Below, piece after piece: positions 11,430 through 40,232 of a stretch of 64,000 nt of DNA (positions within the stretch are counted from its first letter, which is position 1; each line of letters opens with the position of its first letter). The stretch lies in the IMG/VR virus record IMGVR_UViG_3300034117_001582, positions 227,868-291,867 of that record; one strand, given 5' to 3'. The notes under the pieces are model-generated. The model ran no database searches, was not told the origin of the DNA, and saw only the letters and a program-made list of their open reading frames with translations. The translations under genes were made by a program, and so were the position numbers.

Positions 11430-11430
11430 A

Positions 11431-11838: not shown

Positions 11839-11852
11839 ATTATATGAATATA

Positions 11853-12920: not shown

Positions 12921-12935
12921 AATGATAAATACTTT

Positions 12936-14685: not shown

Positions 14686-14763
14686 ATTCGTTTAATATAA
14701 TAATAATCCACCATATTTACAAGTGGAGAATAAAATTTATATTCAGCAATATCCAAATTTAAT

Positions 14764-15273: not shown

Positions 15274-15322
15274 ATTATATAATTATCTTTGTGTTCATTA
15301 ATGTTATATTTCATATCACTTA

Positions 15323-16393
15323 TTAATCCCAATCACCATTTTTTATTGTTTCCATCATCCAAGAAATGATTGATAATAACTCTTCATTAGTTAGGTTGTT
15401 AATAGTTGTTATGTATTGGTCGTTTTGTTCAGTATGTCCGTATTCATCAATATCAAATTCCATTATCTCAACAGCAATTTGGTCGCTGTCTTGAACCATT
15501 ATATCGTCAACATATTTGTTATTACTTAATTGTATTTCATATCCACTAAGTATTCCACTATTATCTCCCCATTTATTACCATTTATTAAAACAAAATCCC
15601 TAATATATTGTTTTAATACTTCTTTAGGGTTATTCATGTTTTTTAACGCCGAACTAATTTGACGAATGTCTAACCCTGACATGTTTATAAAATCATATAA
15701 ACCATACTCATCTATAAGTTCCGTTAAAGATTGTTTTTTATTTTCTGATTCATTCATGGGTTTCCATTTGCAATTTGGTTTTGATATGGATCCAACATAT
15801 AAATTATCTATTGGCAAATAACCTTTAATAGCGTTTTTAACATCATTTCTTAAATTTTCTCCATGTCGCGCTCTTCCAACAAAACTAAAAAATAAATCAT
15901 TTAGTTCTTCCGACCCAAACACCAAATAAATCACATACATATCGTCTTCGAATGTTACTCTAATATCGCAAACACAATCTTCTTTTTTGAATGGTTCTAT
16001 AAGTTCTTTAATTATGTTAAGATACTTTGGTTGTTTTTCTTCGGATTCATTTATAACGTTTCCTTCACTATCGTATTTTAGTTTAATGGCATCCAAACGA
16101 AAATCTGCACTGTTATCTTGGTCATTGTGCCAATATGGAATAAGTTTAATACCTGTATATTCATAGATTTTACGTTGTATTTGTTCTGCAAAATAAGTCT
16201 CTTCATTACCAGCATATTCATCGTTATCAAAATAAACTCTTATCATTGGTTTATTTTCATATTTTTTAATATCAATAAAACTAACCTCATCAAAAAACTC
16301 ATGAATCATTCTTGTCACCAACTTAAGTTTTTTCTCTTCAGATTTGTCAACTGATTCCCTTAATATTTTTTTTATGGATTCTTGTAGGGTCAT
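15323..16393 (-). CDS. Leader-B three-module polyprotein-like protein
   Basis: ILRE|S, VINE|S, PMNE|S partition three modules. Confidence 0.85.
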   Translation of the reverse strand: MTLQESIKKILRESVDKSEEKKLKLVTRMIHEFFDEVSFIDIKKYENKPMIRVYFDNDEYAGNEETYFAEQIQRKIYEYTGIKLIPYWHNDQDNSADFRLDAIKLKYDSEGNVINESEEKQPKYLNIIKELIEPFKKEDCVCDIRVTFEDDMYVIYLVFGSEELNDLFFSFVGRARHGENLRNDVKNAIKGYLPIDNLYVGSISKPNCKWKPMNESENKKQSLTELIDEYGLYDFINMSGLDIRQISSALKNMNNPKEVLKQYIRDFVLINGNKWGDNSGILSGYEIQLSNNKYVDDIMVQDSDQIAVEIMEFDIDEYGHTEQNDQYITTINNLTNEELLSIISWMMETIKNGDWD

Positions 16394-16845
16394 ATAAAAA
16401 TTATATTAGTGGCTTTACAACCAAACTTTTCATTTATTAACTCTAATAACTCAATTTTCCAATTACCTTTACGTCCCAAGTAGTTCTCAATTTCTTCAGC
16501 AAACTGTTCGTAAAATATTATAAAATTAAAATTTGGATTTTTAACATCAGGCATTTCATAACATACTTCAGGTAACTCACCCATTACTTCTTTAAAGTAT
16601 TTACCATTATCGTCATAGTTATTACCATCAACCAATTTGAATAAATAATCATCATAATTATTTTTTGGAAGAACAAACCCAACAGCATATGGGTCACAAC
16701 AAACACCCATTCCACAATTATATTGAGCCCAATCATAATAGATATCATCAAATCCATCAAACAACATATTAAGTAAATTGCTTAAAACGGGTTTAATATT
16801 GGTTTCTTCCCTTAATATTTTTCTTATGGATTCTTGTTGGTTCAT
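16390..16845 (-). CDS. Leader-B protein (MNQQESIRKILREE)
   Basis: ORF track; Cys-rich cargo. Confidence 0.85.
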   Translation of the reverse strand: MNQQESIRKILREETNIKPVLSNLLNMLFDGFDDIYYDWAQYNCGMGVCCDPYAVGFVLPKNNYDDYLFKLVDGNNYDDNGKYFKEVMGELPEVCYEMPDVKNPNFNFIIFYEQFAEEIENYLGRKGNWKIELLELINEKFGCKATNIIFI

Positions 16846-18441
16846 CTATATATTATTTTTAACCATATTATAAAAGAACTCACTGATTTTATCAGGAGTT
16901 GTTATGTTCTGTTGTTTTAATTGTGACCGATAAAACCCTACCATCGCAATTATTTGTGACATAGGCGCGTTTTTATATAATGATGGAGGAATAAACCCTT
17001 TATCTAATAATCCTTGTTTTTGGAGTTGTTTAATCTTTTTTCCCGCAAACTCATCCGCAACTTCTTCAGTATGTTTCATTAGGTTTGCTGCCTCCTCAAC
17101 ACTTATATCACCAAGATAACACTCATACATTAAATCTTCACCATATTTTTTAAATTGGTACTGATGTGCAGTCTCGTGAAATATAATAAACAATAGATAT
17201 TCTAACCTTTGGTTTAACGCCATTTTATTTATTAACACACCATCATGTAAAGCAACTCCCATAGCCGGCATCTTGAAATTGGCAAATTCTATTTTTTTGC
17301 AGTTTGATTGTGAAATAAAATCTTTTACCTTTTCTATTAACTCATCAGACATTTCATGTCTTGATGTAATATCATCTATTAAGGTGTTAACACCATCAGT
17401 TTCTTCCTTTAATACTTTTCTTATGGATTCTTTTAGGTATATGTTTTTCTTTCCACAATCGTTAACTGTTTTGTAATACGTATCAACCGCCTCGTTTGTG
17501 TAATTATAAATTACCTGCCAAATCTCATCCAATATGTTATCATACATTTGTTTAATCCCTTGAGTTTGTGGAAAAAGTTTTGTTCCATGTCCACCAATAA
17601 ATGTTACGGTAACACTTACAAATTTAAATGTATTATTACCCAAAGTATTTCTTTCATTAGGTACCTTAACTTCAAACCCACATATTACGTGGTCATATTC
17701 AGGTAGTATTATATTATTTAATACATTCTCAATCATTTCTTTTTGTGACTCTTCTTTGGATTCTCTTATCATATCTCTGCCAGTACCTTCACGCATTAAT
17801 TCTATTGCTTCTGATGGTATGTTATCAAACGTAACTATATGTTTCTTAGATGATTCAAAATGTCTATCTTTATACCACTTAACATTAGGTATTAATTCTG
17901 TATTGATTGTCCATACATCGTCGTCATATGTAGAATCAAACCACGCTCGTTTATTTGTCGAGTTGGTTGCAAATATTGCAGGTATACATTTTTCACCATA
18001 TCCTGCGTATATTTTATAACATTCACCAGCAATTGCCTTTAACCCTTCATTTGATATTCTATCTCTAAACTTTGGATTGGATTTATGTATAACAATTTTG
18101 TTTGGTGTAATTTCTTTTCCTGCTGGGCTATAATTTTCATTAAGTTCTTCCTCATATCTTTCAGTATCTAAATAAAAATCAGGTTCCTTTTTTAATTCTG
18201 TTCGTTTCTTGTAGTCATACCAAGGAACAACATTTAAACCGGTAAACTTATTTATAGTATCACATATTTCTGAACTCTCTAACTCTTCCCATGCATCATA
18301 GTAAACCATAATCTCATTTCTTTTGGCGATGTATTCTAAATCTATAATATTATCAAACATGGTATATATAAAATTCTTAACTAACTCAAATTTATTAGTC
18401 TCCTCTTTTAATACTTTTTTTATGTTCTTTTTTATGTTCAT
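16846..18441 (-). CDS. Four-module polyprotein-like protein: unknown + ART/Tpt1-like + unknown + IrrE/ImmA-like HExxH peptidase
   Basis: VLKE|, ELNE|, MIRE|, embedded YLKESIRKVLKEE; HETAH...EEVADEFA. Confidence 0.8.
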   Translation of the reverse strand: MNIKKNIKKVLKEETNKFELVKNFIYTMFDNIIDLEYIAKRNEIMVYYDAWEELESSEICDTINKFTGLNVVPWYDYKKRTELKKEPDFYLDTERYEEELNENYSPAGKEITPNKIVIHKSNPKFRDRISNEGLKAIAGECYKIYAGYGEKCIPAIFATNSTNKRAWFDSTYDDDVWTINTELIPNVKWYKDRHFESSKKHIVTFDNIPSEAIELMREGTGRDMIRESKEESQKEMIENVLNNIILPEYDHVICGFEVKVPNERNTLGNNTFKFVSVTVTFIGGHGTKLFPQTQGIKQMYDNILDEIWQVIYNYTNEAVDTYYKTVNDCGKKNIYLKESIRKVLKEETDGVNTLIDDITSRHEMSDELIEKVKDFISQSNCKKIEFANFKMPAMGVALHDGVLINKMALNQRLEYLLFIIFHETAHQYQFKKYGEDLMYECYLGDISVEEAANLMKHTEEVADEFAGKKIKQLQKQGLLDKGFIPPSLYKNAPMSQIIAMVGFYRSQLKQQNITTPDKISEFFYNMVKNNI

Positions 18442-18442
18442 G

Positions 18443-18766
18443 TTACATTACTTGGGATAAAAACTTTTTAATTGTTCTAACCACTTTTTGTCTATATGGA
18501 TTGTTTTCATTTGAAAAATTATCAATTGGTTCTGTAACGTTATTATCTTCTAACATATTCAATATCAATCTTACTTGTCTTTTTTTATTATCAAAAGTTC
18601 CAATATTATAATAATCGTCATCTACTTTGAAATAAACTTTTTTAAATCTAATCTGGTCATCAATATTTATTTCTTCAACTTTATATCTTCGCATAAGAAA
18701 ATTCATAACTTTTTTGTCAATGTCCTCAGTTTCTTCTTTCAATATGTGTCTAATTAGTTTTCTCAT
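18443..18766 (-). CDS. Leader-C protein (MRKLIRHILKEE)
   Basis: ORF track. Confidence 0.85.
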   Translation of the reverse strand: MRKLIRHILKEETEDIDKKVMNFLMRRYKVEEINIDDQIRFKKVYFKVDDDYYNIGTFDNKKRQVRLILNMLEDNNVTEPIDNFSNENNPYRQKVVRTIKKFLSQVM

Positions 18767-19209
18767 TAAATAAAAATATAATCATCAACTTTTAATCCTT
18801 TATATCCTGTCACAGATCCATACGTATAACTCTCTTCTAATTTTAATTCGTCAGGTATATATTCATACATCTCAAACACATATTCACCTAATTTTTGAGA
18901 CTCTATATAGGGGTCAAATTTACCTTCATAATCAAATGGAGTAAGGACATATGCTATTTGTTTGTTTTTAATATATTCAAGGTTATACATCCGTTTTTTT
19001 TCCAAACCATAAAATTCTTTTACCTTTTCATATTCAACAACTAAATCAATATAAATACTTGTCCTATATTCCTCATAGTCGTTATGTAATTGCCAACCAA
19101 CAACAAATGGAAACTCGTTCTTTAATCCGTTAACAACAATATCAATACCCTTATCTATTTGTTGTTTAGATACCTCTTCATTTAATATGTGTTTAATAAG
19201 TCCTCTCAT
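18766..19209 (-). CDS. Leader-C protein (MRGLIKHILNEE)
   Basis: ORF track. Confidence 0.85.
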   Translation of the reverse strand: MRGLIKHILNEEVSKQQIDKGIDIVVNGLKNEFPFVVGWQLHNDYEEYRTSIYIDLVVEYEKVKEFYGLEKKRMYNLEYIKNKQIAYVLTPFDYEGKFDPYIESQKLGEYVFEMYEYIPDELKLEESYTYGSVTGYKGLKVDDYIFI

Positions 19210-19211
19210 TA

Positions 19212-20273
19212 TTATGCTTTTAACGTTTCTACTATATCCTGAATGTCAGACAAATCATAACTACGACTTATGTTGTTTGGTCGTTGTGCAGTCTTTCCGT
19301 TTATTTCCCCCAACTGAACATAGGTTTGAGGCATCCTATGTTCATTACTATCCAATTTAACAACTTTTACTGAAGACTCATCATTAAAAGAATCATATAA
19401 AAAATCTTTAAATTTATGATTCTCATCTTCCGTTAATTTATTTTCATTATAAATAATATTAACTATTGGCCAACTATTAGACATCCACCTATTCCATCCG
19501 GCATCGATAGTTTTAAATGGTAAAACAATTGATGGTTCGTCCCCATCCGTTGTCCAAGATACCTCAACCAAACCTTTTTGGTTTTCAATTCTTTCAACCA
19601 TTTCGGGGTCGTCTTTGAATATTTTTTTTAAATTGTCTAATCCTCCAACCAATTTTGCAGCATAAAATAATCCATCCGTTTTTATTAGATTAATAATGTC
19701 CGAATTATTACTTTCATTTAAACTTTCAGATTCGCCATAAAGTTTGTCGTGTATTCTCTCTACATCTTCTATTGAAAAAGAGTCATCATAATCATGTATA
19801 TCGACATCATTACCGTTTATTTGTGTAACATCAAAATAAGTGGACTTCCCAAAATCAAATGATTTAGTTTTTAACTTTCCTACAGTGTTGTCATTTTGAA
19901 TTACCGAAATAATGGTTATCAGTTTGTTTTTTTCCACCGAAGTTAATTTACTGTCATCATAAATAAGATTTAATTCAGGCCAAGAATGTGTGCCCCATAT
20001 ATTTTTTCCAATACCTATTATTTCATATTTAATTGGAAATACAACAAATTTATCACTTTTAAATTTCCCATCGTAATACATTTCAAAATCAACAACACCT
20101 GTTAATTCATCTAATATTTCAGAAACTTCGAGGTCATCTTTGAATATACTTTTAAGATTATCCAGTCCACCAACCATTTCAGCAGCATCAAAGATATTAT
20201 TATCTTCGATAAATTGTTTCAGCTCTTGTTGGAGTCTATTTTCTTTTAATATGTGTTTAATAAGTTCTCTCAT
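19212..20273 (-). CDS. Leader-C protein with two homologous modules
   Basis: AAEMVGGLDNLKSIFKDD / AAKLVGGLDNLKKIFKDD; HSWPELNLIYD / NSWPIVNIIYN; linker SLNE|S. Confidence 0.88.
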   Translation of the reverse strand: MRELIKHILKENRLQQELKQFIEDNNIFDAAEMVGGLDNLKSIFKDDLEVSEILDELTGVVDFEMYYDGKFKSDKFVVFPIKYEIIGIGKNIWGTHSWPELNLIYDDSKLTSVEKNKLITIISVIQNDNTVGKLKTKSFDFGKSTYFDVTQINGNDVDIHDYDDSFSIEDVERIHDKLYGESESLNESNNSDIINLIKTDGLFYAAKLVGGLDNLKKIFKDDPEMVERIENQKGLVEVSWTTDGDEPSIVLPFKTIDAGWNRWMSNSWPIVNIIYNENKLTEDENHKFKDFLYDSFNDESSVKVVKLDSNEHRMPQTYVQLGEINGKTAQRPNNISRSYDLSDIQDIVETLKA

Positions 20274-20275
20274 TA

Positions 20276-20932
20276 CTATCTACTTCCTCTTACTCTATCT
20301 ATTTCGACCTCACGAAGTTTATCTACATATAATTTATCAATATAACCAGGAGTTTCTTTTTCTTTTTTAATTAAATCGTTTGCTTTCCATAAAGTATTTT
20401 TGACAATAAAATCAATCATTTCATCATTTGTAACTCCTTCAGGTTTTGAAACAGGAGGAACGCAAATTTGAGTTTTTTCTGGATGTACAGAAAATTCATC
20501 TATTGTTATATCATTTCTTCCCATTTTATTTTGGATTGTTTCTAAAAATGTGTCTTCAAACCAGTCTTGAATAACATATTTTAAATAGTTTTTTCTTACG
20601 GGAATGTCTGAATTTAATTCATCAAATATATCTTTAGGCATTTGTAATTCACCACTTTCAAAATCTCTTTCTTCCGTTTTTCTTTTATCATCAAAAACAT
20701 TTTCATCATCATGGAAGAATAATATAACACTCATTATTTCTTTTCCGTCGTTACACCATTCAAAATCATGTCTTGTTTCCCAAGATTTGTCATGATACAT
20801 TTGTGCGCCATCAACATAGTCGTTTAACCACCTATAGATAAGTTTATCCACACTTGGTGTTGGCTTTGAGTATTTCTTATTAACCTCTTCTTTTAATATA
20901 TGTCTAATTAAATTTCTATTCTCCATCATCAT
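20276..20932 (-). CDS. Leader-C protein (..RNLIRHILKEE)
   Basis: Start among the MMM codons at 20932-20926. Confidence 0.8.
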   Translation of the reverse strand: MMMENRNLIRHILKEEVNKKYSKPTPSVDKLIYRWLNDYVDGAQMYHDKSWETRHDFEWCNDGKEIMSVILFFHDDENVFDDKRKTEERDFESGELQMPKDIFDELNSDIPVRKNYLKYVIQDWFEDTFLETIQNKMGRNDITIDEFSVHPEKTQICVPPVSKPEGVTNDEMIDFIVKNTLWKANDLIKKEKETPGYIDKLYVDKLREVEIDRVRGSR

Positions 20933-21347
20933 ATTCTTCTTGTACAAATTGGTATTTCATATTCATTGAATAGTCACCTCCCGCACTCCATTCACAACCA
21001 ATAAACCAAAACATCAAGTTATTATGTTTACCTTTCTTTTCCCCAAAAGACCCATTACTTGTAAATGAATAATTAAGTAAAATTTTATTCAATTCTTTAT
21101 CGACTGTTTTTAGTTGGTCGGTAAACGAAAAAAGGTCAGGGTCTTCACACCAAGATGTTATTAATAATTCACCCTCAATTTCGTTACTTCTGCTAATATA
21201 ATTAATATTCGCAGTTTCTATATTTGTTATTAAACTTGAATCTACATTACTTTGTAATATCCACGCAATTTTTTGAGCAGATCTAATAAACTTTTCTTTA
21301 AGATCTGAAGTATCTTCTTTTAATACTTTTCTAATTATTTCTTTCAT
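20916..21347 (-). CDS. Leader-C protein (MKEIIRKVLKED)
   Basis: ORF track. Confidence 0.85.
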   Translation of the reverse strand: MKEIIRKVLKEDTSDLKEKFIRSAQKIAWILQSNVDSSLITNIETANINYISRSNEIEGELLITSWCEDPDLFSFTDQLKTVDKELNKILLNYSFTSNGSFGEKKGKHNNLMFWFIGCEWSAGGDYSMNMKYQFVQEEYDDGE

Positions 21348-24854: not shown

Positions 24855-26213
24855 TTAACCATAAAAGTAAGTTTTTAACGTCTTTCTAACGTTTTCGTTA
24901 ACTTTTATTATTAATTCTTGATTTTTACTTTTTTTAAACTTTAAATCATTACCATCCCATATTGTATTTACCATTTTACCATTTACCAACGCATTTACCT
25001 TATCAAACTTATCTAACGTTAAACGAACGCTTGTTATTTTTTTATTAAATTTTGATTTTAAATATAAAATAAAGACATTAACGGTTCCTGTTTTAACGTC
25101 ATATTTAATCTTATGTTCTTTTTCTTTATCAATTTCAAAACTAGGCACGGTACCATCTAAAAGTGATTGGAAAATGTCATCCTCATTTGATAATAAGTCA
25201 TTTGGGTTAGTCATCGAAACATTATTAATTTTACTAAATAAATTTCCCCATGTAGTTCCGTTTAATATGCCGTCCTTGATTGTTAATGCCTCACCACTAC
25301 CAATACTAACCTTATACCCATTAAGTGTTTTTTTAAGTGATAAATAATAACCTGACCCATCAGGTATTTTTTTTGTTTTGCCATCATTTTCTAATGGTTC
25401 TCCATAAAAAATATATTCACCATCACCTAAAACACCCAAAGAAACGTTTTCATCTAACACAAAATTACTATATGAATCAACAACCCCTGTTGGTGTTGTA
25501 TTATTATTATTTAGTGTTGGTTTTGGTATTACCTCATCATTTGGCGTATCACTTTGCCCAAACTTTAAATCTTTACCATCCCATATTACGGTAACATCTT
25601 CCTGATTTATGGTGGCAGTTATACCATCGGACGAATTTAATTCTAACCGAACATATGGTATTTTTTTATCACATTTTGATTTTAATATTAACGTAACAAT
25701 AATAACGGTTCCGGTTTTAGGGTCAAACACAATGTTATTTGACACATCTTCTTTATCAATTTCAAAACAAGAAACGGTATTATTTAAAAGTGATTGGATG
25801 ATGTTATTTGCATCCGATGATAAACCATTTGGAGTATTAAATGAAACTTTATTAAATTTATAAAATAAATCTTTCCATGTGTTATCAATTAATTTACCAT
25901 CTTCGATTGTTAAATATGCATTATGGTCAATATTAACGTTAACCCCATTAATTGTTTTTTCAAGGGTTAAATAATATTTTGACCCGTCAGGTATATTTTT
26001 AGTTGTGTTATAATCTTTAAAAACACTTTCGACATTAAAAAAGTCATAAACACCACCATCTAAAATACCCAAAGAACTATTTTTATCTAATGTTATATAC
26101 TTACCACTTGAATTAGCAACCCCCGTTGGTGTTGTAGGATCAACATCTTCATTCAATATTCGTCTAACAATTCTTTTTAAATCGGATTCAGTAAGTCTTA
26201 TTACTTTTTTCAT
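24855..26213 (-). CDS. Leader-A protein with tandem duplicated ~190-aa domain
   Basis: TTPTGV...IPDGS.YYL...SLL..TV..FEIDKE...KTGTV...IWDG.DLKF twice. Confidence 0.9.
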   Translation of the reverse strand: MKKVIRLTESDLKRIVRRILNEDVDPTTPTGVANSSGKYITLDKNSSLGILDGGVYDFFNVESVFKDYNTTKNIPDGSKYYLTLEKTINGVNVNIDHNAYLTIEDGKLIDNTWKDLFYKFNKVSFNTPNGLSSDANNIIQSLLNNTVSCFEIDKEDVSNNIVFDPKTGTVIIVTLILKSKCDKKIPYVRLELNSSDGITATINQEDVTVIWDGKDLKFGQSDTPNDEVIPKPTLNNNNTTPTGVVDSYSNFVLDENVSLGVLGDGEYIFYGEPLENDGKTKKIPDGSGYYLSLKKTLNGYKVSIGSGEALTIKDGILNGTTWGNLFSKINNVSMTNPNDLLSNEDDIFQSLLDGTVPSFEIDKEKEHKIKYDVKTGTVNVFILYLKSKFNKKITSVRLTLDKFDKVNALVNGKMVNTIWDGNDLKFKKSKNQELIIKVNENVRKTLKTYFYG

Positions 26214-26252: not shown

Positions 26253-26579
26253 TTAAACTAATAACGTAACCATTTCTTTAATGCTTTGTTCTGAAACGAC
26301 ACCAACACTTGTATTCGTTACTTCAGACCCATTAAACGATTTGATTGCAGGAATACTTCTAATACCAATAGACGTTACGTAATCCTTATTTTTATCTATG
26401 TCCATAGTATACATTTGGATTTCAGTTTGATTGTTTTTGGCCACTTTTTCAAATATTGGCATCATCATCTTACAGGGTCCGCACCATAATCCATGAAATT
26501 CAACAATAATTTTTTCACCATTGTTTAATTTTTCTTTTAATTCTTTTGCGGTAATTTCTAAATTATTATGTCCTTCCAT
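26253..26579 (-). CDS. trxA: Thioredoxin
   Basis: WCGPC active site; IRSIP cis-Pro motif. Confidence 0.93.
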   Translation of the reverse strand: MEGHNNLEITAKELKEKLNNGEKIIVEFHGLWCGPCKMMMPIFEKVAKNNQTEIQMYTMDIDKNKDYVTSIGIRSIPAIKSFNGSEVTNTSVGVVSEQSIKEMVTLLV

Positions 26580-27268
26580 CTTCTATTATTTTTTATACTA
26601 TATAAATATTGTTTATTAAATTTTGGGTATTTTTTATTTACATCGCTAATAGATGCGCCTTCTTTAAATTCTTTTTTTATTTCCTTAATAATTTCAACAC
26701 CATATTTTGATTGTTTTCTAATATTTTGTGTTGTTTTATTTATTCTTTTTTCTTTTTCTTCTTCGGACATATTGTCCCAACCATTTTTAACTGATAGTTT
26801 TCGTCTTTCTTTTTCTTCATTAGCCTTATCCCCATATAAGTCCTCATACGTTTTACCTTTATGTGATCTACCATCTTTTAATTTTTTAGAAATCTTTTCT
26901 CTAATTTCTTTAGAGTGTCTATACCCTAAACATCCTTCACCTCCGTGTGTTGAGTTTAAACCTTCTTTATATGTGTCAAGGTCATTTATGTGGTGTTTTT
27001 CTCTTTCGTATATGTTTGATGCATTACACTCTTCTAATAACTCTATTTGAAAGTTTTCAACCCCATACTTTCTTATAGAATTACAAAATTTTGTATTTAT
27101 GTCTGTTTTTAAACATCTCCAAGCGTGTTCTTCAAATCTTTTTTTTAATGATGTTATTGTGCAACCAACATATTGTTTACCGTTAATAATGTTTTTAATT
27201 ATATATATGTAACCTTTTTCTAACATTATGGTGTTTATATATAAATATCACCATACAGCTCAAATTTC
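26553..27268 (-). mobile_element. Free-standing homing endonuclease insertion flanked by GAAATT direct repeats
   Basis: Left ATG GAAATT TGA (27271-27260); right TTA GAAATT ACC in trxA. Confidence 0.65.
26558..27226 (-). CDS. GIY-YIG homing endonuclease with NUMOD3-like motif
   Basis: GYIYIIKNIINGKQYVGCT..RF..H; GYRHSKEIREKISKKLK. Confidence 0.92.
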   Translation of the reverse strand: MLEKGYIYIIKNIINGKQYVGCTITSLKKRFEEHAWRCLKTDINTKFCNSIRKYGVENFQIELLEECNASNIYEREKHHINDLDTYKEGLNSTHGGEGCLGYRHSKEIREKISKKLKDGRSHKGKTYEDLYGDKANEEKERRKLSVKNGWDNMSEEEKEKRINKTTQNIRKQSKYGVEIIKEIKKEFKEGASISDVNKKYPKFNKQYLYSIKNNRRWKDIII

Positions 27269-27276
27269 CATAATTA

Positions 27277-27534
27277 TTATATTTTAACGACACGATTCCT
27301 AAAAAAACTATTAACTTTATGTTCTTCTCTATAATAGTTATTTTTTGGATTTTTCTTCTTTTCTGCATCCATATGACCATAATGATAAGCTCTATTTATA
27401 GCACTTTCTTCGTGGTTTTCTAATGAATTTGTTTTATCTATAATTTCTTCAATTAATGACAAAATGTCAGGGTTTGTTTCATTACCCTTTTTTTCTTTTA
27501 ACCAATTTCTTAATTCTTGTCGGAATGTTTTCAT
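27277..27534 (-). CDS. Hypothetical protein
   Basis: 85-aa ORF; TTGACA-N17-TATATT upstream (~27543-27571). Confidence 0.75.
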   Translation of the reverse strand: MKTFRQELRNWLKEKKGNETNPDILSLIEEIIDKTNSLENHEESAINRAYHYGHMDAEKKKNPKNNYYREEHKVNSFFRNRVVKI

Positions 27535-27600: not shown

Positions 27601-28176
27601 TTAAATATAATATTCAATTAATTCTTTTATTGGTTTGATTAATTGTTTAGGGTAATCGTTATTTAAAAAATCAATAAGTTCCTGTATTGAGTTAAAACTT
27701 GATGGAGTGTATTCTATTTTTTTATCTGAATTACTGTATTCATCAACATATTCATCTGTTTTTTTATCCTCAAAATAACTACCATCAACAGGAGTTTCAC
27801 AATCACCACCCCAATAAGGTGTTGCAAAACCTGTTAACTTATATTCTTTATCATTAAACTCAAAATCTATAGTCCCACTAAAACCACCCGAACTTAAATT
27901 TAGAAACATTTGACCATTGTTAAAATTATAATTTTTATTAATAAAATCAGTGTTAAACATAAGTTTTAGGACTAAGTCCTCAGCAAATTTACAATCTATG
28001 TTTATTTCTCTATTTTTAAGATAAGAAATAATTTGATGATTACTCATTCCCGTATAATCTTTAATGTCATCTATTGACATTCCCTCCATCCACATACTAT
28101 ATAAAAGGTCTGACTTCTTTTCTTCTTTGGATTCAAAAAGATTCTTATATTGAGATTCTGTTAATATTATTTTCAT
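27601..28176 (-). CDS. Leader-D protein (MKIILTESQYKNLFES)
   Basis: ORF track. Confidence 0.87.
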   Translation of the reverse strand: MKIILTESQYKNLFESKEEKKSDLLYSMWMEGMSIDDIKDYTGMSNHQIISYLKNREINIDCKFAEDLVLKLMFNTDFINKNYNFNNGQMFLNLSSGGFSGTIDFEFNDKEYKLTGFATPYWGGDCETPVDGSYFEDKKTDEYVDEYSNSDKKIEYTPSSFNSIQELIDFLNNDYPKQLIKPIKELIEYYI

Positions 28177-28472
28177 CTTTTCTTTTTAACTTTATTAAAA
28201 CCGTTTCTAATTTTATTGTTAAATTGTCCCGACATTAACATTAAAAAATCGTGTTTTGTAAATTTAATATCTGGATTATTATCTTCAAAACTCCATTCAG
28301 TTCTATTCGTTACCCACCCTTCGTAAACACCAAAATTATCAGGTTTATTACCTGGACCACTATTCATTATATCCTTATTTAATTCTTTAATAGAAGTATC
28401 AAGAATTTGTTCTAATTCACTTATCCTTCTTAATAATGCTATTTGAGATTCTGTTATTATTATTTTCATCAC
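28173..28472 (-). CDS. Leader-D protein (MKIIITESQIALL)
   Basis: ORF track; ATGA-type overlap. Confidence 0.85.
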   Translation of the reverse strand: MMKIIITESQIALLRRISELEQILDTSIKELNKDIMNSGPGNKPDNFGVYEGWVTNRTEWSFEDNNPDIKFTKHDFLMLMSGQFNNKIRNGFNKVKKKR

Positions 28473-28876
28473 CAGTTAAAGTCTTTTCTTTTATTGATTA
28501 CTTCTCCTATTGATATAGACGCAACACTTCCCCCTAATATGTCTCTTACTTCCCCCTGTAACTGATAAATAAAATTATCTAAATCGTAAAATAAATATAT
28601 AGATTCAAGATGAATATCAACGGTAATATGTATTTGAGATAATTCTTTTTTTTCAAGGTAACCCATAGAGGTTGTTTTTGATACATCTACCACCTTTATT
28701 TCTTCAATCATTTCTATTGGGTCACATATGTAATTGTGGTGTGACCTTATATAAGAACCTCCCTCACATTTTTCTTTTACCCCATCAAAAGCCATGTCAA
28801 TAAGATTTTGCATCGACTCATTTTTATTTGATTCAAATAACATTTTATATTGTCTCTCTGTAATTATTATTTTCAT
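28469..28876 (-). CDS. Leader-D protein (MKIIITERQYKMLFES)
   Basis: ORF track. Confidence 0.87.
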   Translation of the reverse strand: MKIIITERQYKMLFESNKNESMQNLIDMAFDGVKEKCEGGSYIRSHHNYICDPIEMIEEIKVVDVSKTTSMGYLEKKELSQIHITVDIHLESIYLFYDLDNFIYQLQGEVRDILGGSVASISIGEVINKRKDFNW

Positions 28877-29985
28877 ATCTCCACGTAATTTACGGTAACG
28901 TACATTGCAGTTCTTGGGTATGTTAAATCATTCATACAATCTTGAATTACCCCTTCAACTTCGTTTTGAATTTCCCACCCAACATTACTATCGGCAATAG
29001 CATCATCTAATCTTTCAGTTTTACCATTCATTAAAGAAACCATTCCACCTTCAGATACTTGGGCGGATAAATATATTTCAAAATCTCTTACGTATACATC
29101 AGATATTCTCCATTCAAAATCATAACCACCAACAGTTTTTTCAGGAAAATCTTTGGTGTGAAAAGTATTAATTGCTATGTGGTTTATGATTTCCCTTATT
29201 TTTTCCTCTCCTCCAATGTAGTCACTAAAAAATTCCTCGTACATTACGATATCTTTTCTATTATTATGGGTACTAATACCAAAATATTTTAATACGTCAG
29301 GATCAAATGTAGCATAACCTTTTTCCTCCTTTTCTTTATCCCACATCTGTATAAGAATGTCAGATTTTCTGGTAGGTTTTTGTGTGTTCTCATTTATACC
29401 ATAAGGTGCTCCATATATCTCTTGTAAGTCAATATCCACATCAATTGGGATTCCGTATTTTTCTAATAAACCATAAAAGAAATCATATACTGAACTTCTA
29501 ATCATTCCTTCAAAATCAGAACCTTCATAATTAAGTAACGCCTCATGGTAAGCAGCATCTATTGTGTCGTTCACCGTATATTCTTCATCCGTATCTTCAT
29601 TCCATCCTTGAAATCTCATAGTTCCACGAGGATCAACATCAACCATAATTTCAAGAATTGGTCTTTCAAAATCAAGATGAACAACTTTCATTGTTGTTTC
29701 CAAATCAAATTCACCCTCAACTAACTTATATTCCTTGGCATCAATTTCATCTTCAAGTTTTTTAAACAACACCTCAGAACCTCCATTGTATTCATACCAA
29801 ATTGGTCTAATGGTATCGTAATCTTCACGAGTTTCTTTATTAATATCCAAAACTCTAAATAACATATAATCCAAACTTGGTTCTTCCCCATGTTTTTTTT
29901 GATTATCCCAAAAACCATATAAAAACTCCCGAAGTTTTTTTTCAGTGAGGTTTTGATATTGTGATTCTGTTATTATTATTTTCAT
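28873..29985 (-). CDS. Leader-D protein with two distantly related modules
   Basis: NLTE|KKLREFLYGFWD and GINE|N..RKSDILIQMWD. Confidence 0.87.
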   Translation of the reverse strand: MKIIITESQYQNLTEKKLREFLYGFWDNQKKHGEEPSLDYMLFRVLDINKETREDYDTIRPIWYEYNGGSEVLFKKLEDEIDAKEYKLVEGEFDLETTMKVVHLDFERPILEIMVDVDPRGTMRFQGWNEDTDEEYTVNDTIDAAYHEALLNYEGSDFEGMIRSSVYDFFYGLLEKYGIPIDVDIDLQEIYGAPYGINENTQKPTRKSDILIQMWDKEKEEKGYATFDPDVLKYFGISTHNNRKDIVMYEEFFSDYIGGEEKIREIINHIAINTFHTKDFPEKTVGGYDFEWRISDVYVRDFEIYLSAQVSEGGMVSLMNGKTERLDDAIADSNVGWEIQNEVEGVIQDCMNDLTYPRTAMYVTVNYVEI

Positions 29986-30905
29986 TTTATTTTTAATTTT
30001 TGACCAACTTTTATACTATCTGATTTCAAATTATTTAATTTTTTTATTGTTTCAGCCGTTACCGTTTTATCGTATTTAGCCGCTATTTTAGAAAGACTAT
30101 CACCTGGTTTTACCGTATAAAAGACATCATAAGAATTAATAGGTTTAGAGTTTAATGTTTTATCTGTTTCCTTACTAATTTTTTTATTTGGGGTAAAATA
30201 TTGGTTACACTCAGGATGTTGACTCATTTTATACATATCTAATCCCGATATTAATTGTGATAAACATTTTTCTTTACCCCATACCGCACCCTTTTCTAAT
30301 GGGTTATTAACTGGTTTTTTTGTTTTTAATTCGTTACCATATCTTTTAAAAGCCTCTTGATTTGTTACCATTCTATCGGCAACACCACCTTTATATTTTG
30401 GATTCTTTGCTTGTGAAAAATCTATATCCCAACCTTGTAAGTATTTTGTTGCAGCATCTTGCCAATTACCAGCGTTAATTGCTTCAACCCACTTGTAACC
30501 TTTTTTTGCTTCACCTCGATAAACTGAATTTACAAGAGCCTTTCTTACGTATAACGGATAGTTATCATACTTTGGGAAAAGAGATTTAGTTTTATTTTCT
30601 TCTTTTTGAATATCTGACGTTAATAATTGTTCCGCCTTAGATTTTGTTATAGTATTTCCAATTTTAGCTTCAGGTCCTGTGTGTCCCCAACCGATAGTCA
30701 AAGTGCCTCCTCTTTTTTTACTTGATGCGTTTACAAATGTTTTAGGGTCTTTAGGGTCTTTGTCATCAAAAACATAGTGTTTACCTGATGAATTGGTCAC
30801 TTCATTTTCGTAAGACTTAATAATTTTTCTAAAATCTTCATCATCAGTCAATGGCGTACCCTCCATTAATAAATTAAATTGTGATTCTGTTATTATTATT
30901 CTCAT
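29982..30905 (-). CDS. Leader-D + GH24 (T4-type) lysozyme + C-terminal LysM
   Basis: IKSYENE...D...GTLTIGWGH; YTVKPGDSLSKIAAKY....IKKLNNLKSDSIKVGQKLKI; no signal peptide. Confidence 0.88.
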   Translation of the reverse strand: MRIIITESQFNLLMEGTPLTDDEDFRKIIKSYENEVTNSSGKHYVFDDKDPKDPKTFVNASSKKRGGTLTIGWGHTGPEAKIGNTITKSKAEQLLTSDIQKEENKTKSLFPKYDNYPLYVRKALVNSVYRGEAKKGYKWVEAINAGNWQDAATKYLQGWDIDFSQAKNPKYKGGVADRMVTNQEAFKRYGNELKTKKPVNNPLEKGAVWGKEKCLSQLISGLDMYKMSQHPECNQYFTPNKKISKETDKTLNSKPINSYDVFYTVKPGDSLSKIAAKYDKTVTAETIKKLNNLKSDSIKVGQKLKIK

Positions 30906-30924
30906 AAACTATAAATAGTTTAAA

Positions 30925-30958
30925 CAAAAAAAAAAGTCAGGGATATCCCTGACCTTTT
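30925..30958 (-). terminator. Intrinsic terminator
   Basis: gtcaggga ta tccctgac perfect hairpin + 9-T tract. Confidence 0.85.
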
Positions 30959-30976
30959 CATATATATAGAGTGGGT

Positions 30977-36139: not shown

Positions 36140-36739
36140 ATGGGTTACACAAGAGAACAGGTTGTGGCTGCCGTTAAAGCCAAAGGTTACGTCTACTTTG
36201 AAGACGCAAATAATAAAAGTTATGATGTTAACATCATTGGAATTAGAAACTCAACAACAGGACAAAAAGTTACGAATGTGTTTGATGATTTATTAACCGT
36301 TTCTTATAAAGACGAAACCGGTGCTTGGCATTACCACGAATGGGCTGCAACTACAGACCCAGGAACAAAGGGTGTTAAACAATTTGGTAATAAAGCTGGT
36401 GTTGCTAGACTTGTTGAAGGTCAATACAGAGGTTCACACATTATTAGATTACATGGAGGAAAATACGAAGCGTTAGGACAAAACAAACCAGTAAAGGTAT
36501 ACCGAGACGCAAACCGTGATATGGCATATGACGAAAAATTAATTCAAGAAGGTGTTTTTGGTATAAACATTCATAAAGCAGGTGCCGATTCTACATATGT
36601 GGAAAATTGGTCTGAAGGATGTCAAGTATTTAAAAAATCAGCAAACTTTGAAGAATTTATGAAAATCTGTAGAAAATCGAAAGATATTCACGGCAATTCT
36701 TTCACTTATACACTAATTGAAAGTTCAGACATTAAGTAA
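36140..36739 (+). CDS. L,D-transpeptidase(YkuD)-fold peptidoglycan enzyme, endolysin candidate
   Basis: GINIHKAG......WSEGCQV matches H...SxGC catalytic motif; ATTDPG. Confidence 0.65.
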   Translation: MGYTREQVVAAVKAKGYVYFEDANNKSYDVNIIGIRNSTTGQKVTNVFDDLLTVSYKDETGAWHYHEWAATTDPGTKGVKQFGNKAGVARLVEGQYRGSHIIRLHGGKYEALGQNKPVKVYRDANRDMAYDEKLIQEGVFGINIHKAGADSTYVENWSEGCQVFKKSANFEEFMKICRKSKDIHGNSFTYTLIESSDIK

Positions 36740-36740
36740 T

Positions 36741-36770
36741 GAAAAAGGGAAGTAAAACTTCCCTTTTTTT
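36741..36770. terminator. Bidirectional terminator between convergent genes
   Basis: aaaaagggaag taaaa cttcccttttt. Confidence 0.85.
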
Positions 36771-39650: not shown

Positions 39651-40232
39651 TTATTTTCTATCCATTCTTGATTTGTCGGCGGCCTTGTAGTGAAAACCGG
39701 TTTTATACTTATCATATCCACCTCTTTTAAAGAACGCAGAGTCTTTTAAAGTCACACCCAACAAAGAAACAATACCAGCAACAAGAGCGGCTCCACCACC
39801 AATAAACATCGCGGCCGGCACAATTCCTAAACCAGCTATCAAACTAGTATTTTGAACAATTTTATCTAAAATTCCTCTTAATTTCATTTCAGTTTCACTC
39901 ATTCCGTATTGTTTTTCAAAATCCTCATACATCATTTCGTCAACTTCTGAATAATTAGCATCTTCCTCTTCCATTTGTGATACCACATCCATCAACATGT
40001 CTTCTAATTCATCTTTACCTTTACGTTTCATTAAATCACTAAGGAATCTCATTTCAGATGGTGAAATAGTATGTTGTAGTTCTTCTTTAGCGGTTTCTAA
40101 ATCCATTTTAGAAAAATCCGATTCCCCTTCCATTTCTTGGGAGTCTGCCATCCATTGTTCTTCATCTTCTTTGATAATTCTTTTTACCAAATTAATAAGT
40201 TCGGATTCTGTTAGTCTTATAGTTCTTTTCAT
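39651..40232 (-). CDS. Leader-A protein, acidic with C-terminal hydrophobic hairpin
   Basis: MKRTIRLTESELINLVKRIIKE; LIAGLGIVPAAMFIGGGAALVAGIVSLLGV. Confidence 0.87.
   Translation of the reverse strand: MKRTIRLTESELINLVKRIIKEDEEQWMADSQEMEGESDFSKMDLETAKEELQHTISPSEMRFLSDLMKRKGKDELEDMLMDVVSQMEEEDANYSEVDEMMYEDFEKQYGMSETEMKLRGILDKIVQNTSLIAGLGIVPAAMFIGGGAALVAGIVSLLGVTLKDSAFFKRGGYDKYKTGFHYKAADKSRMDRK

What the first reader, a model, noticed from the sequence alone, without database searches (positions are those of the whole stretch)
29982..30905. Leader + GH24 lysozyme + LysM: likely a virion-delivered muralytic enzyme rather than an endolysin
Seen: leader D (MRIIITESQFNLLME|G) directly before a T4-type lysozyme domain and a LysM; no signal peptide or SAR; heads an operon of five leader-D genes (27601-30905) behind TATTTAT 30911-17; a separate lysin candidate exists at 36140. 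Established: ejected internal lysozymes help genome entry (e.g. T7 gp16). This is the most interpretable cargo and fits head packaging and ejection.
Basis: partly seen in the sequence, partly recalled or inferred. Interest (0 to 1): 0.6.

Follow-up and report, generated by a model that had tools for sequence, protein, structure and literature searches.

The report
Leader-tagged phage lysozyme, probably head-packaged
A giant lake-water phage of Flavobacterium-like bacteria makes a cell-wall-cutting enzyme with a short tag that looks like phage T4's "pack me into the head, then cut me off" signal, so the enzyme is probably carried in the virus particle rather than serving as the usual bursting enzyme; this is untested.

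Summary
Window 29982-30905(-) encodes 307 aa: a 15-aa leader (MRIIITESQFNLLME), a divergent but complete GH24 lysozyme (aa ~16-189), a linker and a LysM domain (aa 260-307). There is no membrane segment. It is the first of five translationally coupled leader-bearing genes, behind a terminator and a TATTTAT motif.

The window is the end of a 292-kb, 99%-complete lake-water jumbo phage with a T4-type head module and a bS21 gene.

Main support for head packaging:
- The genome encodes a T4 gp21-family prohead protease.
- All 108 leader-bearing lysozyme homologues place [L/I]-x-E at aa 13-16, followed by A/S/G in 92%. This is the T4 gp21 cleavage motif.
- The same site type ends 26 of 28 type A/D leaders, lies at the expected place in the major capsid protein, and is densest in a core-position protein.
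- Structural alignment puts residue 1 of free-standing phage lysozymes at aa 16-23, so the leader is an add-on.

Other wall hydrolases (Amidase_2; NlpC/P60+M23) sit beside membrane-protein genes; the lysozyme does not.

Packaging plus cleavage is likely (~0.65-0.7). A role in entry is inferred only. It is a new variant of known kinds (T4 capsid-targeting cargo; virion muralytic enzymes). Nothing here is experimentally shown.

The parts
30930..30959 (-). Intrinsic-terminator-like hairpin (13 pairs plus a T-run) that ends the upstream 83-aa gene and isolates the lysozyme operon.
   Evidence: sequence
30911..30917 (-). TATTTAT, a phage promoter-like motif 12 nt before the ATG. It implies a leaderless or near-leaderless mRNA.
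   Evidence: The motif is 9.3x enriched upstream of genes (86/355), at 11-12 or 18-25 nt from the start codon. It also precedes the protease, the scaffold-position gene and many leader genes.
29982..30905 (-). Whole gene: 307-aa precursor (34.8 kDa). The predicted mature form is aa 16-307, 33.0 kDa, pI 9.5.
30861..30905 (-). Leader or propeptide, aa 1-15 (MRIIITESQFNLLME). The predicted prohead-protease cut is after E15, in L13-M14-E15|G16.
   Evidence: M1, T6, E7, Q9 and E15 are invariant in 27 aligned homologues. [L/I]-x-E occurs in 108/108, with P1' = A45/S35/G19. Codons vary synonymously among paralogues. Low-confidence helix at aa 7-15.
30339..30839 (-). GH24 (T4/P22-type) lysozyme domain, aa ~23-189. 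Putative catalytic residues are E33, D47/D48 and T70, with an ~18-aa insertion between the Asp and Thr.
   Evidence: Pfam PF00959. VIA-align: model 16-188 against P22 lysozyme 1-146 (Z 7.4); model 23-189 against T4 lysozyme 1-156 (Z 6.1-6.3). Foldseek top hits are all GH24. E33, D47, D48 and T70 are invariant.
30129..30338 (-). Variable linker, aa 190-259, with two Cys (CLSQ...PEC) kept in most LysM-type homologues. Poorly modelled.
29985..30128 (-). LysM peptidoglycan-binding domain, aa 260-307.
   Evidence: Pfam PF01476, 7.6e-17. pLDDT ~90. Z 8.3, rmsd 0.8-1.0 A to T. thermophilus LysM. Some homologues carry an SH3-like module here instead.
28873..29985 (-). Second operon gene, 370 aa, leader MKIIITESQYQNLTE|K. 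Cargo of unknown function.
   Evidence: conserved next to the lysozyme in L016 and L024
28469..28876 (-). Third operon gene, 135 aa, leader MKIIITERQYKMLFE|S.
28173..28472 (-). Fourth operon gene, 99 aa, leader (M)MKIIITESQIALLRRISE|L.
27601..28176 (-). Fifth operon gene, 191 aa, leader MKIILTESQYKNLFE|S.
36140..36739 (+). Separate, leaderless wall-enzyme candidate (199 aa) with its own TATTTAT (35 nt upstream) and its own terminator (36741-36769). Invariant H145 and S158-E-G-C161 resemble a YkuD-type motif; that reading is inference.
   Evidence: phrog_3000 and part of phrog_33083 'endolysin'. Homologues in Bacteroides, crAss-like and Pseudoalteromonas phages. 596+ relatives in IMG/VR. Invariant residues. 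No fold obtained. Atlas leads to PG_binding-associated clusters.

Best explanation
The gene encodes a muralytic enzyme precursor made late in infection.

Proposed mechanism:
1. The 15-residue N-terminal leader works like the capsid-targeting sequence (CTS) of phage T4 internal proteins. It binds the precursor to the scaffolding core while the prohead assembles.
2. The phage's gp21-family prohead protease cuts after L13-M14-E15.
3. The free 33-kDa basic GH24-LysM enzyme (new N-terminus GTPLTDD...) stays inside the filled head, together with dozens of other leader-tagged proteins.
4. It leaves through the tail at infection.
5. Released at the cell envelope, its LysM domain would hold it on peptidoglycan and its lysozyme domain would open the wall locally for the tail tube or DNA conduit.

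Shown here: the domain architecture, conservation of the leader and of the cleavage-type site, the presence of the protease, a shared promoter-like motif, and the existence of other lysis-enzyme candidates.

Inferred: targeting, cleavage, presence in virions, ejection into the periplasm rather than the cytoplasm, and the benefit for entry.
For: 1. Genome context. The window is the last 64 kb of a 291,867-bp, 99%-complete virus record. Its head module is T4-type: portal (phrog_213, 4e-62), prohead protease (Peptidase_S77 PF03420, 5.5e-26; phrog_207, 8e-43), a scaffold-position gene, and a gp23-like MCP (phrog_138, 4e-67).

2. Cleavage-type site. The published gp21 specificity is L/I-X-E, first seen as Glu-Ala bonds, and T4 CTS propeptides are 10-20 aa (PMC9026906; PMC5694885). 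Here:
- The leader ends in L-M-E|G.
- All 108 leader-bearing homologue clusters have [L/I]-x-E at leader length 15-16 (2 at 12), with P1' A/S/G in 99 of 108.
- 26 of 28 type A/D leader proteins have such a site, against 31% of other proteins (p=9e-11).
- The MCP has I-N-E|A at aa 58-61, ahead of its conserved core.
- The 242-aa protein beside the protease has the highest [LI]xE[AGS] density in the proteome: 5 sites, 2.07 per 100 aa against 0.22. This is what one expects of a degraded core protein.

3. The leader is a portable add-on.
- It heads about 50 otherwise unrelated proteins.
- Conservation stops at E15, where a variable-length linker follows.
- Synonymous codon variation shows selection at the protein level.
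- Residue 1 of free-standing lysozymes aligns at aa 16-23.

4. Shared promoter-like motif. The operon carries the TATTTAT motif that also precedes the protease and scaffold-position genes, right after a terminator.

5. Not in a lysis cassette.
- There are no TM-protein genes within about 5 kb.
- An Amidase_2 (PF01510, 1e-11) lies between a 419-aa multi-TM protein and two spanin-like proteins. An NlpC/P60+M23 enzyme is followed by a 2-TM 117-aa protein.

6. This is the only GH24 domain in the genome, and no SLT domain is present. No lysozyme domain is therefore available for a T4 gp5-like hub.

7. Three leader-tagged proteins carry C-terminal TM segments, as ejection proteins that build envelope conduits do.

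8. The leader-lysozyme and the five-gene operon are conserved in relatives at 53-68% identity.
Against: - There are no proteomic, enzymatic or genetic data.
- In T4 the CTS cargo is delivered into the cytoplasm (PMC9026906), where a lysozyme is useless. Periplasmic release is an assumption.
- Swapping the wall-binding module (LysM versus SH3-like) is typical of endolysins too.
- The genome has another plausible virion lysin (NlpC/P60+M23, whose N-domain matches 'tail protein with lysin activity' PHROGs). The need for a head-borne enzyme is therefore not established.
- The leader is longer than the T4 CTS, and its similarity to the T4 CTS was not tested.
- In one freshwater lineage the leader is internal, behind a 132-aa in-frame TM-containing extension.
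- The lysozyme model is only moderately confident (pLDDT 71.7; GH24 Z 6-8), and the Asp of the catalytic triad is assigned by motif only.
- The protease-leader docking job gave no answer.
- TATTTAT also precedes non-structural genes, so it does not by itself prove co-regulation with the head.
Confidence: 0.5

Rival explanations
1. It is the phage's ordinary cytoplasmic endolysin, or one of several. It accumulates late and reaches the wall when a holin elsewhere in the genome opens the membrane. The N-terminal leader has another role, or none for this protein.
For: - GH24 plus a wall-binding module is a classic endolysin architecture. All best structural matches are endolysins and the PHROG hits are labelled endolysin.
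- The wall-binding module swaps between LysM and SH3-like.
- Late promoter-like motif.
- In one lineage a TM-containing ORF lies directly upstream, in frame.
Against: - The leader is kept in 108/108 leader-bearing homologue clusters with a gp21-type site, and is shared with about 50 unrelated proteins.
- There are no holin or spanin candidates within about 5 kb.
- Two other wall hydrolases do sit beside membrane-protein genes.
- The gene heads an operon of four other leader-tagged unknowns, not lysis genes.
Confidence: 0.2
2. Dual use. Part of the pool is loaded into heads through the leader. The unpackaged remainder, or enzyme released from defective particles, assists lysis from within at the end of infection.
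For: The evidence is the same as for packaging and for the endolysin-like architecture. Nothing in the sequence excludes both roles. T4 packages only 20-200 copies of CTS fusions per head (PMC9026906), so an unpackaged pool is expected.
Against: There is no export route for the cytoplasmic pool other than a holin encoded far away. It is a less economical reading, and no known precedent was found in the literature searches.
Confidence: 0.15
3. The leader is not a packaging signal. It is a shared N-terminal module for something else: translation initiation on SD-less, leaderless late mRNAs (possibly linked to the phage bS21), chaperone or protease recognition, or membrane or assembly-site targeting. 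Under this reading the lysozyme's location is undetermined.
For: - The phage encodes bS21 inside the head module (PF01165, 7.5e-10), as in the lineage described in bioRxiv 10.1101/2021.10.11.463225.
- TATTTAT sits only 11-12 nt before many start codons, implying leaderless mRNAs whose first codons could matter.
- Leader codons are uniformly A/T-rich.
Against: - Synonymous sites vary freely while the amino acids stay fixed.
- Several distinct leader families all end in [LIV]-x-E.
- The exact match to gp21 specificity, including small P1' residues, is not explained by translation.
- The leader also occurs internally in one lineage.
Confidence: 0.1

Closest known systems
Phage T4 internal proteins IPI/IPII/IPIII and Alt: capsid-targeting sequence plus gp21 processing
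   Same: - A short N-terminal propeptide is shared by unrelated cargo proteins.
- It ends in L/I-x-E followed by a small residue.
- A gp21-family protease and a gp23-like capsid protein are encoded in the same genome.
- The cargo genes cluster in a variable genome region.
- The mature cargo is basic.

   Different: - The leader is 15-22 aa rather than 10. No alignment to the T4 CTS was made.
- About 50 tagged genes in several leader families, against a handful in T4.
- The cargo here is a peptidoglycan hydrolase with a wall-binding domain. I found no report of this for T4-type CTS cargo.
- Packaging and cleavage are not demonstrated.
T7 gp16 and phiKMV-like internal virion proteins with a muralytic domain
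   Same: The proposed function is the same: an enzyme stored inside the head and ejected to cut peptidoglycan during entry. Leader-tagged TM proteins in this genome recall the conduit-forming core proteins.
   Different: - By my own knowledge, gp16 is a very large core protein with a lytic-transglycosylase domain in a podovirus, with no cleavable CTS.
- Here the protein is a small stand-alone GH24-LysM enzyme in a T4-type myovirus.
- No SLT domain is present in the genome.
- The resemblance is functional only, not family membership.
T4 gp5 baseplate-hub lysozyme
   Same: A GH24 domain used by the virion for wall penetration. The model aligns to the gp5 lysozyme domain (7cn7, Z 6.1).
   Different: - gp5 has an OB-fold N-domain and a beta-helix needle and is assembled into the baseplate. 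None of that is present here.
- This protein instead carries a head-type leader and a LysM domain.
GH24 endolysins of phages P22, 21 (R21) and Acinetobacter phages (AbLys1, PHAb10/11)
   Same: The same fold and probable catalytic Glu. These are the best structural and sequence matches.
   Different: - Those enzymes start at the position equal to aa 16-23 here, or carry a SAR/TM anchor. None has this leader.
- This protein has an ~18-aa insertion before the TIGWGHTG strand, plus a C-terminal LysM.
- Sequence similarity is marginal (E about 0.01).
Ejection or internal head proteins of giant phages phiKZ, 201phi2-1 and SPN3US
   Same: Dozens of head proteins are processed after Glu at a short motif by a gp21-related protease, and paralogues share conserved N-termini (PMC5694885).
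   Different: - Those phages use A/S/G-x-E motifs and mostly long (>100 aa) propeptides.
- They have a different capsid lineage and carry a virion RNA polymerase.
- No muralytic cargo is reported there.

Membership tests
GH24 (T4/P22-type phage lysozyme, Pfam PF00959) | Sequence profile match above the curated threshold | tested here: met
   PF00959: 45.3 bits against a cut-off of 22.3, E=1.3e-11, aa 62-161. 46.8 bits in the genome scan.
GH24 (T4/P22-type phage lysozyme, Pfam PF00959) | Two-lobed lysozyme fold | tested here: met
   The AF2 model (pLDDT 71.7) aligns over aa 16-189 to full-length P22 lysozyme (Z 7.4), PHAb11 (Z 8.1) and T4 lysozyme residues 1-156 (Z 6.1-6.3). Every non-LysM Foldseek hit at ranks 1-16 is GH24. 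Z values are moderate and rmsd is 4-6 A.
GH24 (T4/P22-type phage lysozyme, Pfam PF00959) | Catalytic Glu, with the Asp and Thr of the T4 triad | tested here: inconclusive
   E33, D47, D48 and T70 are invariant in 27 homologues. T70 aligns with the TIG motif of P22 and R21 lysozymes. E33 falls where T4 E11 would lie if model residue 23 equals T4 residue 1. The Asp is assigned by motif only, because an ~18-aa insertion intervenes. Activity was not tested.
LysM peptidoglycan-binding domain (PF01476) | Profile match and beta-alpha-alpha-beta fold | tested here: met
   61.4 bits against a cut-off of 20.9. pLDDT ~90. Z 8.3, rmsd 0.8-1.0 A over 46-48 residues to 4uz3/4xcm.
T4-type CTS-tagged internal head protein | gp21-family (Peptidase_S77) prohead protease and gp23-like capsid encoded by the same phage | tested here: met
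   PF03420: 88.5 bits, E=5.5e-26, at G000:154931-155350. phrog_207, phrog_138 and phrog_213.
T4-type CTS-tagged internal head protein | Short N-terminal propeptide shared among unrelated proteins and ending in L/I-x-E | tested here: met
   Leader families in about 50 genes. [L/I]-x-E in 108/108 homologues, with A/S/G at P1' in 92%. 26/28 against a 31% background, p=9e-11.
T4-type CTS-tagged internal head protein | Sequence similarity of the leader to the T4 CTS | not tested
From memory the two are not obviously alignable. The length differs (15 aa against 10 aa; for T4).
T4-type CTS-tagged internal head protein | Actual incorporation into proheads, cleavage by the protease, and presence in mature virions | not testable with these tools
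   This needs virion proteomics. The one docking job (protease plus aa 1-40) returned no answer.
Canonical or SAR endolysin of a lysis cassette | N-terminal signal-anchor-release or signal sequence | tested here: not met
   The maximum 19-residue hydropathy is 0.46, and the leader has two Glu.
Canonical or SAR endolysin of a lysis cassette | Adjacency to holin or spanin genes | tested here: not met
   No predicted TM protein is encoded between window coordinates 20276 and 37390. Membrane-protein neighbours are found instead beside the Amidase_2 and the NlpC/P60+M23 genes. Exception: one related lineage has an in-frame TM ORF upstream.
T4 gp5-type baseplate lysozyme | OB-fold N-domain and C-terminal beta-helix flanking the lysozyme | tested here: not met
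   The only domains found are leader, GH24, linker and LysM.
T7 gp16-type internal core protein | Large core protein with an N-terminal SLT/lytic-transglycosylase domain | tested here: not met
   The protein is 307 aa with a GH24 domain. There is no SLT (PF01464) match anywhere in the genome.

The most novel reading that the evidence does not exclude
A widespread lineage of freshwater T4-superfamily jumbo phages (the bS21-encoding phages of Bacteroidota) uses several families of cleavable N-terminal capsid-targeting leaders. With them it loads about 50 diverse proteins, roughly one gene in seven, into its head. The set would include a GH24-LysM wall hydrolase and TM-bearing proteins that together act as an ejected envelope-penetration apparatus. 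That would be a podovirus-style 'ejectosome' inside a contractile-tailed phage, with the lysozyme as its first enzymatically assayable component.
Probability: 0.3. Interest if true: 0.75.

Novelty: new variant of a known kind. Interest (0 to 1): 0.55.

Why it matters
If the enzyme is head-packaged, three things follow.

- It would extend the T4 capsid-targeting principle from small anti-restriction or host-takeover proteins to a wall-degrading enzyme.
- It would show that a contractile-tailed phage can carry its entry muralytic activity in the head rather than on the baseplate.
- It would give an experimental handle on a very large, otherwise uninterpretable set of leader-tagged unknown proteins in an abundant group of lake phages. 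The handles are a zymogram and a predicted neo-N-terminus.

The leader plus [L/I]-x-E rule could then be used to predict virion cargo directly from metagenomic sequence. The leader could also serve as a packaging tag for phages of Bacteroidota.

If instead it is just an endolysin with an odd N-terminus, the finding is ordinary.

Tried and rejected
- **Isolate matches.** Nucleotide and protein BLAST of the locus and the lysozyme against 50,697 phage records gave no match at E<=1e-5. No cultured close relative is in that collection (release of Aug 2025).
- **Leader strings in the literature.** Full-text search for LTESDL, IIITESQ and similar found nothing. Three further searches found no report of a CTS-tagged lysozyme.
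- **Docking.** Complex prediction with the prohead protease and aa 1-40 of the lysozyme scored 0.00, 'no answer'. This is neither for nor against binding.
- **ORF 36140 fold.** AF2 on an 18-sequence alignment reached only pLDDT 48, so no fold search was run. Sequence and profile searches of the PDB gave nothing significant, and Pfam gave nothing. The Atlas gave only sub-threshold leads to PG_binding- and XVIPCD-associated clusters.
- **Other cargo.**
  - Of the four other operon proteins, Pfam and PHROGs gave nothing for two and only sub-threshold hits (E 0.004-0.008) for the 135-aa and 191-aa proteins.
  - The Atlas gave no lead for the 370-aa protein.
  - Pfam scans of 20 further leader-bearing proteins found almost only orphans. 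No housekeeping enzyme turned up to contradict the packaging idea.
  - Weak or partial hits: a sub-threshold DHH match, CarboxypepD_reg/Ig-like domains, and a DnaJ-type Cys-rich domain.
- **Metatranscriptome contigs from lake water.** Short pieces lie on parts of the operon and on the upstream gene. Coverage is sparse, includes relatives, and cannot exclude DNA carry-over. It is not used as evidence of expression or of a transcript start.
- **Nucleus-targeting idea.** I considered that the leader might target a phiKZ-like phage nucleus. I set it aside because the head module is T4-type. I did not search for chimallin.
- **Conserved DNA or RNA element idea.** I considered that the leader might simply be a conserved nucleic-acid element. 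I rejected this because of the synonymous variation.
Full report
**What is there**

Window 29982-30905 on the minus strand is an intact 307-codon ORF. Its product has four parts.

- A 15-residue leader, MRIIITESQFNLLME.
- A lysozyme domain. Pfam Phage_lysozyme/GH24 matches aa 62-161 at E=1.3e-11. Structural alignment of an AlphaFold model (27-sequence alignment A1, mean pLDDT 71.7) extends the fold to aa 16-189. It matches full-length P22 lysozyme (Z 7.4), PHAb11 (Z 8.1), and T4 lysozyme residues 1-156 against model residues 23-189 (Z 6.1-6.3).
- A poorly modelled linker, aa 190-259, with two conserved cysteines.
- A LysM domain, aa 260-307: Pfam 7.6e-17, pLDDT about 90, Z 8.3 at rmsd 0.8-1.0 A.

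E33, D47, D48 and T70 are invariant across 27 homologues. T70 lies in the TIGWGHTG strand that aligns with the catalytic-Thr strand of the P22 and phage 21 lysozymes. E33 falls where T4 Glu11 would lie. The Asp is assigned by motif only, because this family has an ~18-residue insertion there.

No 19-residue window exceeds a hydropathy of 0.46, so there is no signal peptide or SAR anchor.

**Immediate surroundings**

- The upstream 83-aa gene ends in a 13-bp-stem terminator (30930-30959).
- TATTTAT follows at 30911-30917, then the ATG 12 nt later.
- Four further genes follow with 4-nt ATGA overlaps. Each begins MKII[IL]TE.Q.
- No membrane-protein gene lies between window coordinates 20276 and 37390.
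- The operon and its order are conserved in relatives with 53-68% identical lysozymes (L016, L024).

**Whose genome**

- The window is the last 64 kb of a 291,867-bp virus record judged 99% complete, with 31.8% G+C.
- It has a T4-type head module at 150-161 kb: portal, a Peptidase_S77 (gp21-family) prohead protease, an acidic 516-aa protein in the scaffold position, and a gp23-like major capsid protein.
- A ribosomal protein bS21 gene lies on the opposite strand inside that module (PF01165, 7.5e-10).
- This is the signature of the bS21-encoding jumbo myophages of freshwater Bacteroidetes described in bioRxiv 10.1101/2021.10.11.463225.
- The nearest capsid proteins among isolates are 40-44% identical, in Flavobacterium 'immuto' phages and Microcystis phage Mel-JY01.
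- Near-identical DNA occurs in many lake-water metagenomes from 2020-2024.

**The leader is a system, not a quirk**

- Clustering the first 40 residues of 355 ORFs joins 54 genes into one N-terminal similarity cluster, a few of them probably spurious. A separate family holds 7 genes.
- Codons at conserved residues vary freely (ATA/ATT/ATC, ACA/ACG/ACT, GAA/GAG, TCA/TCT/TCC, TTA/CTT/TTG). Selection therefore acts on the peptide, not on a DNA or RNA element.
- The proteins behind the leaders are otherwise unrelated and almost all orphans.
- Three have C-terminal TM segments.

**Why the leader looks like a T4-type capsid-targeting propeptide**

T4 gp21 cuts after L/I-X-E, first recognised as Glu-Ala bonds. 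T4 internal proteins and Alt carry 10-20-residue N-terminal propeptides that target them to the prohead core and are then removed (PMC9026906; PMC5694885). The evidence here runs parallel.

- The lysozyme leader ends L13-M14-E15|G16.
- Of 117 homologue clusters, 108 start with the leader core. All 108 have [L/I]-x-E, mostly at position 13-15 or 14-16. The next residue is Ala (45), Ser (35) or Gly (19), which is 92% small.
- Conservation stops at that Glu, and a variable-length linker follows.
- Within this genome, 26 of 28 type A/D leader proteins have [LIV]-x-E ending at residue 12-24, against 31% of the remaining proteins (Fisher p=9e-11).
- The phage's own head proteins use the same grammar. 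The capsid protein has I-N-E|A at residues 58-61, ahead of its conserved core. The 242-aa protein next to the protease has five [LI]xE[AGS] sites, the highest density in the proteome and 9.5 times the mean, as expected of a core protein that is chopped up.
- Free-standing phage lysozymes begin where residue 16-23 of this protein lies. The leader is therefore an extra piece in front of a complete enzyme.

**Expression signal**

TATTTAT is 9.3-fold enriched in the 60 nt before genes (86 of 355). It sits at two preferred distances, 11-12 and 18-25 nt. It precedes the protease and scaffold-position genes, several very large genes of structural size, many leader genes and this operon. It also precedes some non-structural genes, so I read it as a phage promoter motif compatible with late expression, not as proof of it.

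**Is there another enzyme for lysis?**

- This is the only GH24 domain in the genome, and there is no SLT domain.
- An Amidase_2 enzyme (G000:39958-40605) lies between a 419-aa multi-TM protein and, downstream, a 116-aa N-terminal-TM coiled-coil protein and a 148-aa protein with a signal peptide and a C-terminal TM. That layout resembles a holin/endolysin/spanin cassette.
- A 370-aa NlpC/P60+M23 double endopeptidase (G000:205316-206428) is followed by a 117-aa two-TM protein. Its N-domain also matches 'tail protein with lysin activity' PHROGs, so it could be a tail lysin.
  - It has homologues in Bacteroides, crAss-like and P2-like Pseudoalteromonas phages and more than 596 relatives in IMG/VR.
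  - It matches the C-terminal half of a PHROG whose N-terminal half matches this very lysozyme.
  - Its invariant H145 and S158-x-G-C161 recall YkuD-type enzymes; that is my inference. I could not obtain a fold.

**Interpretation**

The most economical reading is that the protein is made with the head proteins, tethered to the prohead core by its leader, trimmed at E15|G16 by the gp21-like protease, kept in the head, and expelled at infection. I put packaging plus cleavage at about 0.65-0.7.

The further claim, that it cuts peptidoglycan to help entry, is weaker.

- In T4 the CTS cargo ends up in the cytoplasm.
- The genome has another possible virion lysin.
- LysM/SH3 module swapping fits endolysins as well.

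In its favour:

- The phage has no lysozyme domain available for a gp5-type hub.
- The cargo set includes TM-bearing proteins like those that build envelope conduits in other phages.
- The mature enzyme is built to bind the wall.

Overall confidence in the full mechanism is 0.5.

The rivals are a plain endolysin (0.2), dual use (0.15), and a leader with a non-packaging role such as translation on leaderless mRNAs in a bS21 phage (0.1).

**A complication worth noting**

In one freshwater lineage (five homologue clusters) a 132-residue ORF with one hydrophobic segment is fused in frame directly upstream of the MKIIITE start, with no stop codon and no internal TATTTAT. There are two readings.

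- The leader and its cut site can work internally, as a longer propeptide with the same mature product.
- Translation restarts at the internal Met.

The data do not decide between them.

**Comparison with known systems**

- It works like T4 IP/Alt cargo in targeting and processing. The proposed role is like T7 gp16 or the phiKMV internal muralytic proteins.
- It is a member of GH24 and carries a LysM domain.
- It is not a gp5-type hub protein, a gp16-type core protein, or a SAR endolysin, because defining features were tested and not met.
- Membership in 'T4-type CTS cargo' is met for every feature testable in silico. Similarity to the T4 CTS itself was not tested, and packaging itself is untestable here.
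- I found no paper describing this leader or a CTS-tagged lysozyme.
- I rate it a new variant of a known kind, interest 0.55. The wider leader system is more remarkable than this single gene, but the lysozyme is its most testable member.

**Limits**

- Everything is computational.
- The lysozyme model is of moderate confidence.
- The one protein-protein prediction gave no answer.
- RNA-library contigs over the locus are too sparse and ambiguous to use.
- No alternative genetic code was needed.

Noticed in passing
Whole genome G000; in the window e.g. 925-1179, 2359-2793, 3290-3727, 3808-4254, 4350-4787, 5519-6309, 8237-20947, 24855-26213, 39651-40232, 45227-46471, 47589-48152: About 50 of 355 ORFs begin with one of several related leader families: M..[IV]RLTESDL.RIV.R[IV][IL].E; MKIIITESQY..L.E; MNLQENIRRIQ.MM; M..LIRHILKEE. 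A further 7 begin with a ..SEEEK.RIL.LH.. family. Nearly all end in [LIV]-x-E. Most sit in the last 70 kb of the genome.
   Followed up: partly
G000:156088-156282 (+), outside the window (locus L011:16088-16282): A ribosomal protein bS21 gene lies on the opposite strand inside the T4-type head module (PF01165, 7.5e-10). This places the phage among the bS21-encoding freshwater Bacteroidetes jumbo phages of bioRxiv 10.1101/2021.10.11.463225.
   Followed up: partly
Genome-wide; in the window e.g. 30911-30917, upstream of 36140, 45227-46471 and 47589: TATTTAT, usually [AG]TATTTAT[AT], is 9.3x enriched upstream of genes. It has two preferred spacings to the ATG: 11-12 nt, implying leaderless mRNAs, and 18-25 nt. 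No Shine-Dalgarno-like sequence is evident in these upstream stretches (not tested), which would fit a Bacteroidota host.
   Followed up: partly
Locus L024:6001-7281 (freshwater metagenome contig); proteins P0069, P0082, P0085-P0087: In one related lineage a 132-aa ORF with a proline-rich hydrophobic segment is fused in frame upstream of the lysozyme's MKIIITE leader. The open frame is kept in five diverged clusters. It may be a membrane-anchored or long-propeptide variant.
   Followed up: partly
G000:38637-41782 (-), outside the window (locus L020:2637-5782): Candidate lysis cassette, in order: a 419-aa multi-TM coiled-coil protein, an Amidase_2 enzyme, a 188-aa unknown, a 116-aa N-terminal-TM coiled-coil protein, and a 148-aa protein with a signal peptide and a C-terminal TM (spanin-like).
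   Followed up: partly
G000:205316-206941 (+), outside the window (locus L021:2316-3941): A 370-aa NlpC/P60 + Peptidase_M23 double endopeptidase is followed by a 117-aa two-TM protein. This is either a second lysis pair or a tail-associated lysin, since its N-domain matches 'tail protein with lysin activity' PHROGs.
   Followed up: partly
Proteins P0050, P0053, P0061, P0079 compared with window 29985-30128: Homologues of the lysozyme swap the C-terminal wall-binding module. Some have LysM. Others have a ~110-aa SH3-like module behind a Lys/Thr/Pro-rich linker. The leader and catalytic domain stay 70-90% identical.
   Followed up: no
Window 26558-27226 (-): A GIY-YIG endonuclease-like gene lies between the operon's 85-aa neighbour and the thioredoxin gene. 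It is absent at this position in relative L016 but present in L024. RNA-library contigs join 26543 to 27264 and 26757 to 27477, skipping about 720 nt. This suggests a mobile homing-endonuclease insertion that is polymorphic in the lake population.
   Followed up: partly
Window 39651-40232 (-), 47589-48152 (+); G000:206973-207512: Three leader-tagged proteins have one or two hydrophobic TM-like segments after the leader. This is unusual for soluble head cargo, but is reminiscent of ejection proteins that insert into the host envelope.
   Followed up: no
Window 30865-30907: In lake metatranscriptome assemblies, several contigs match only these ~43 nt (the leader-coding stretch) and then run into unrelated sequence. 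The leader-coding sequence is therefore shared by many different genes in the community.
   Followed up: no
G000:41958-42773 (-), outside the window: An ORF whose sequence looks like a sigma-70 region-2 factor lies next to the candidate lysis cassette (judged by eye, not scanned). Flavobacterium jumbophage isolates FKo-1 and FTs-1 are reported to carry two sigma-factor variants (PMC13573597), so they may be relatives usable for experiments.
   Followed up: no
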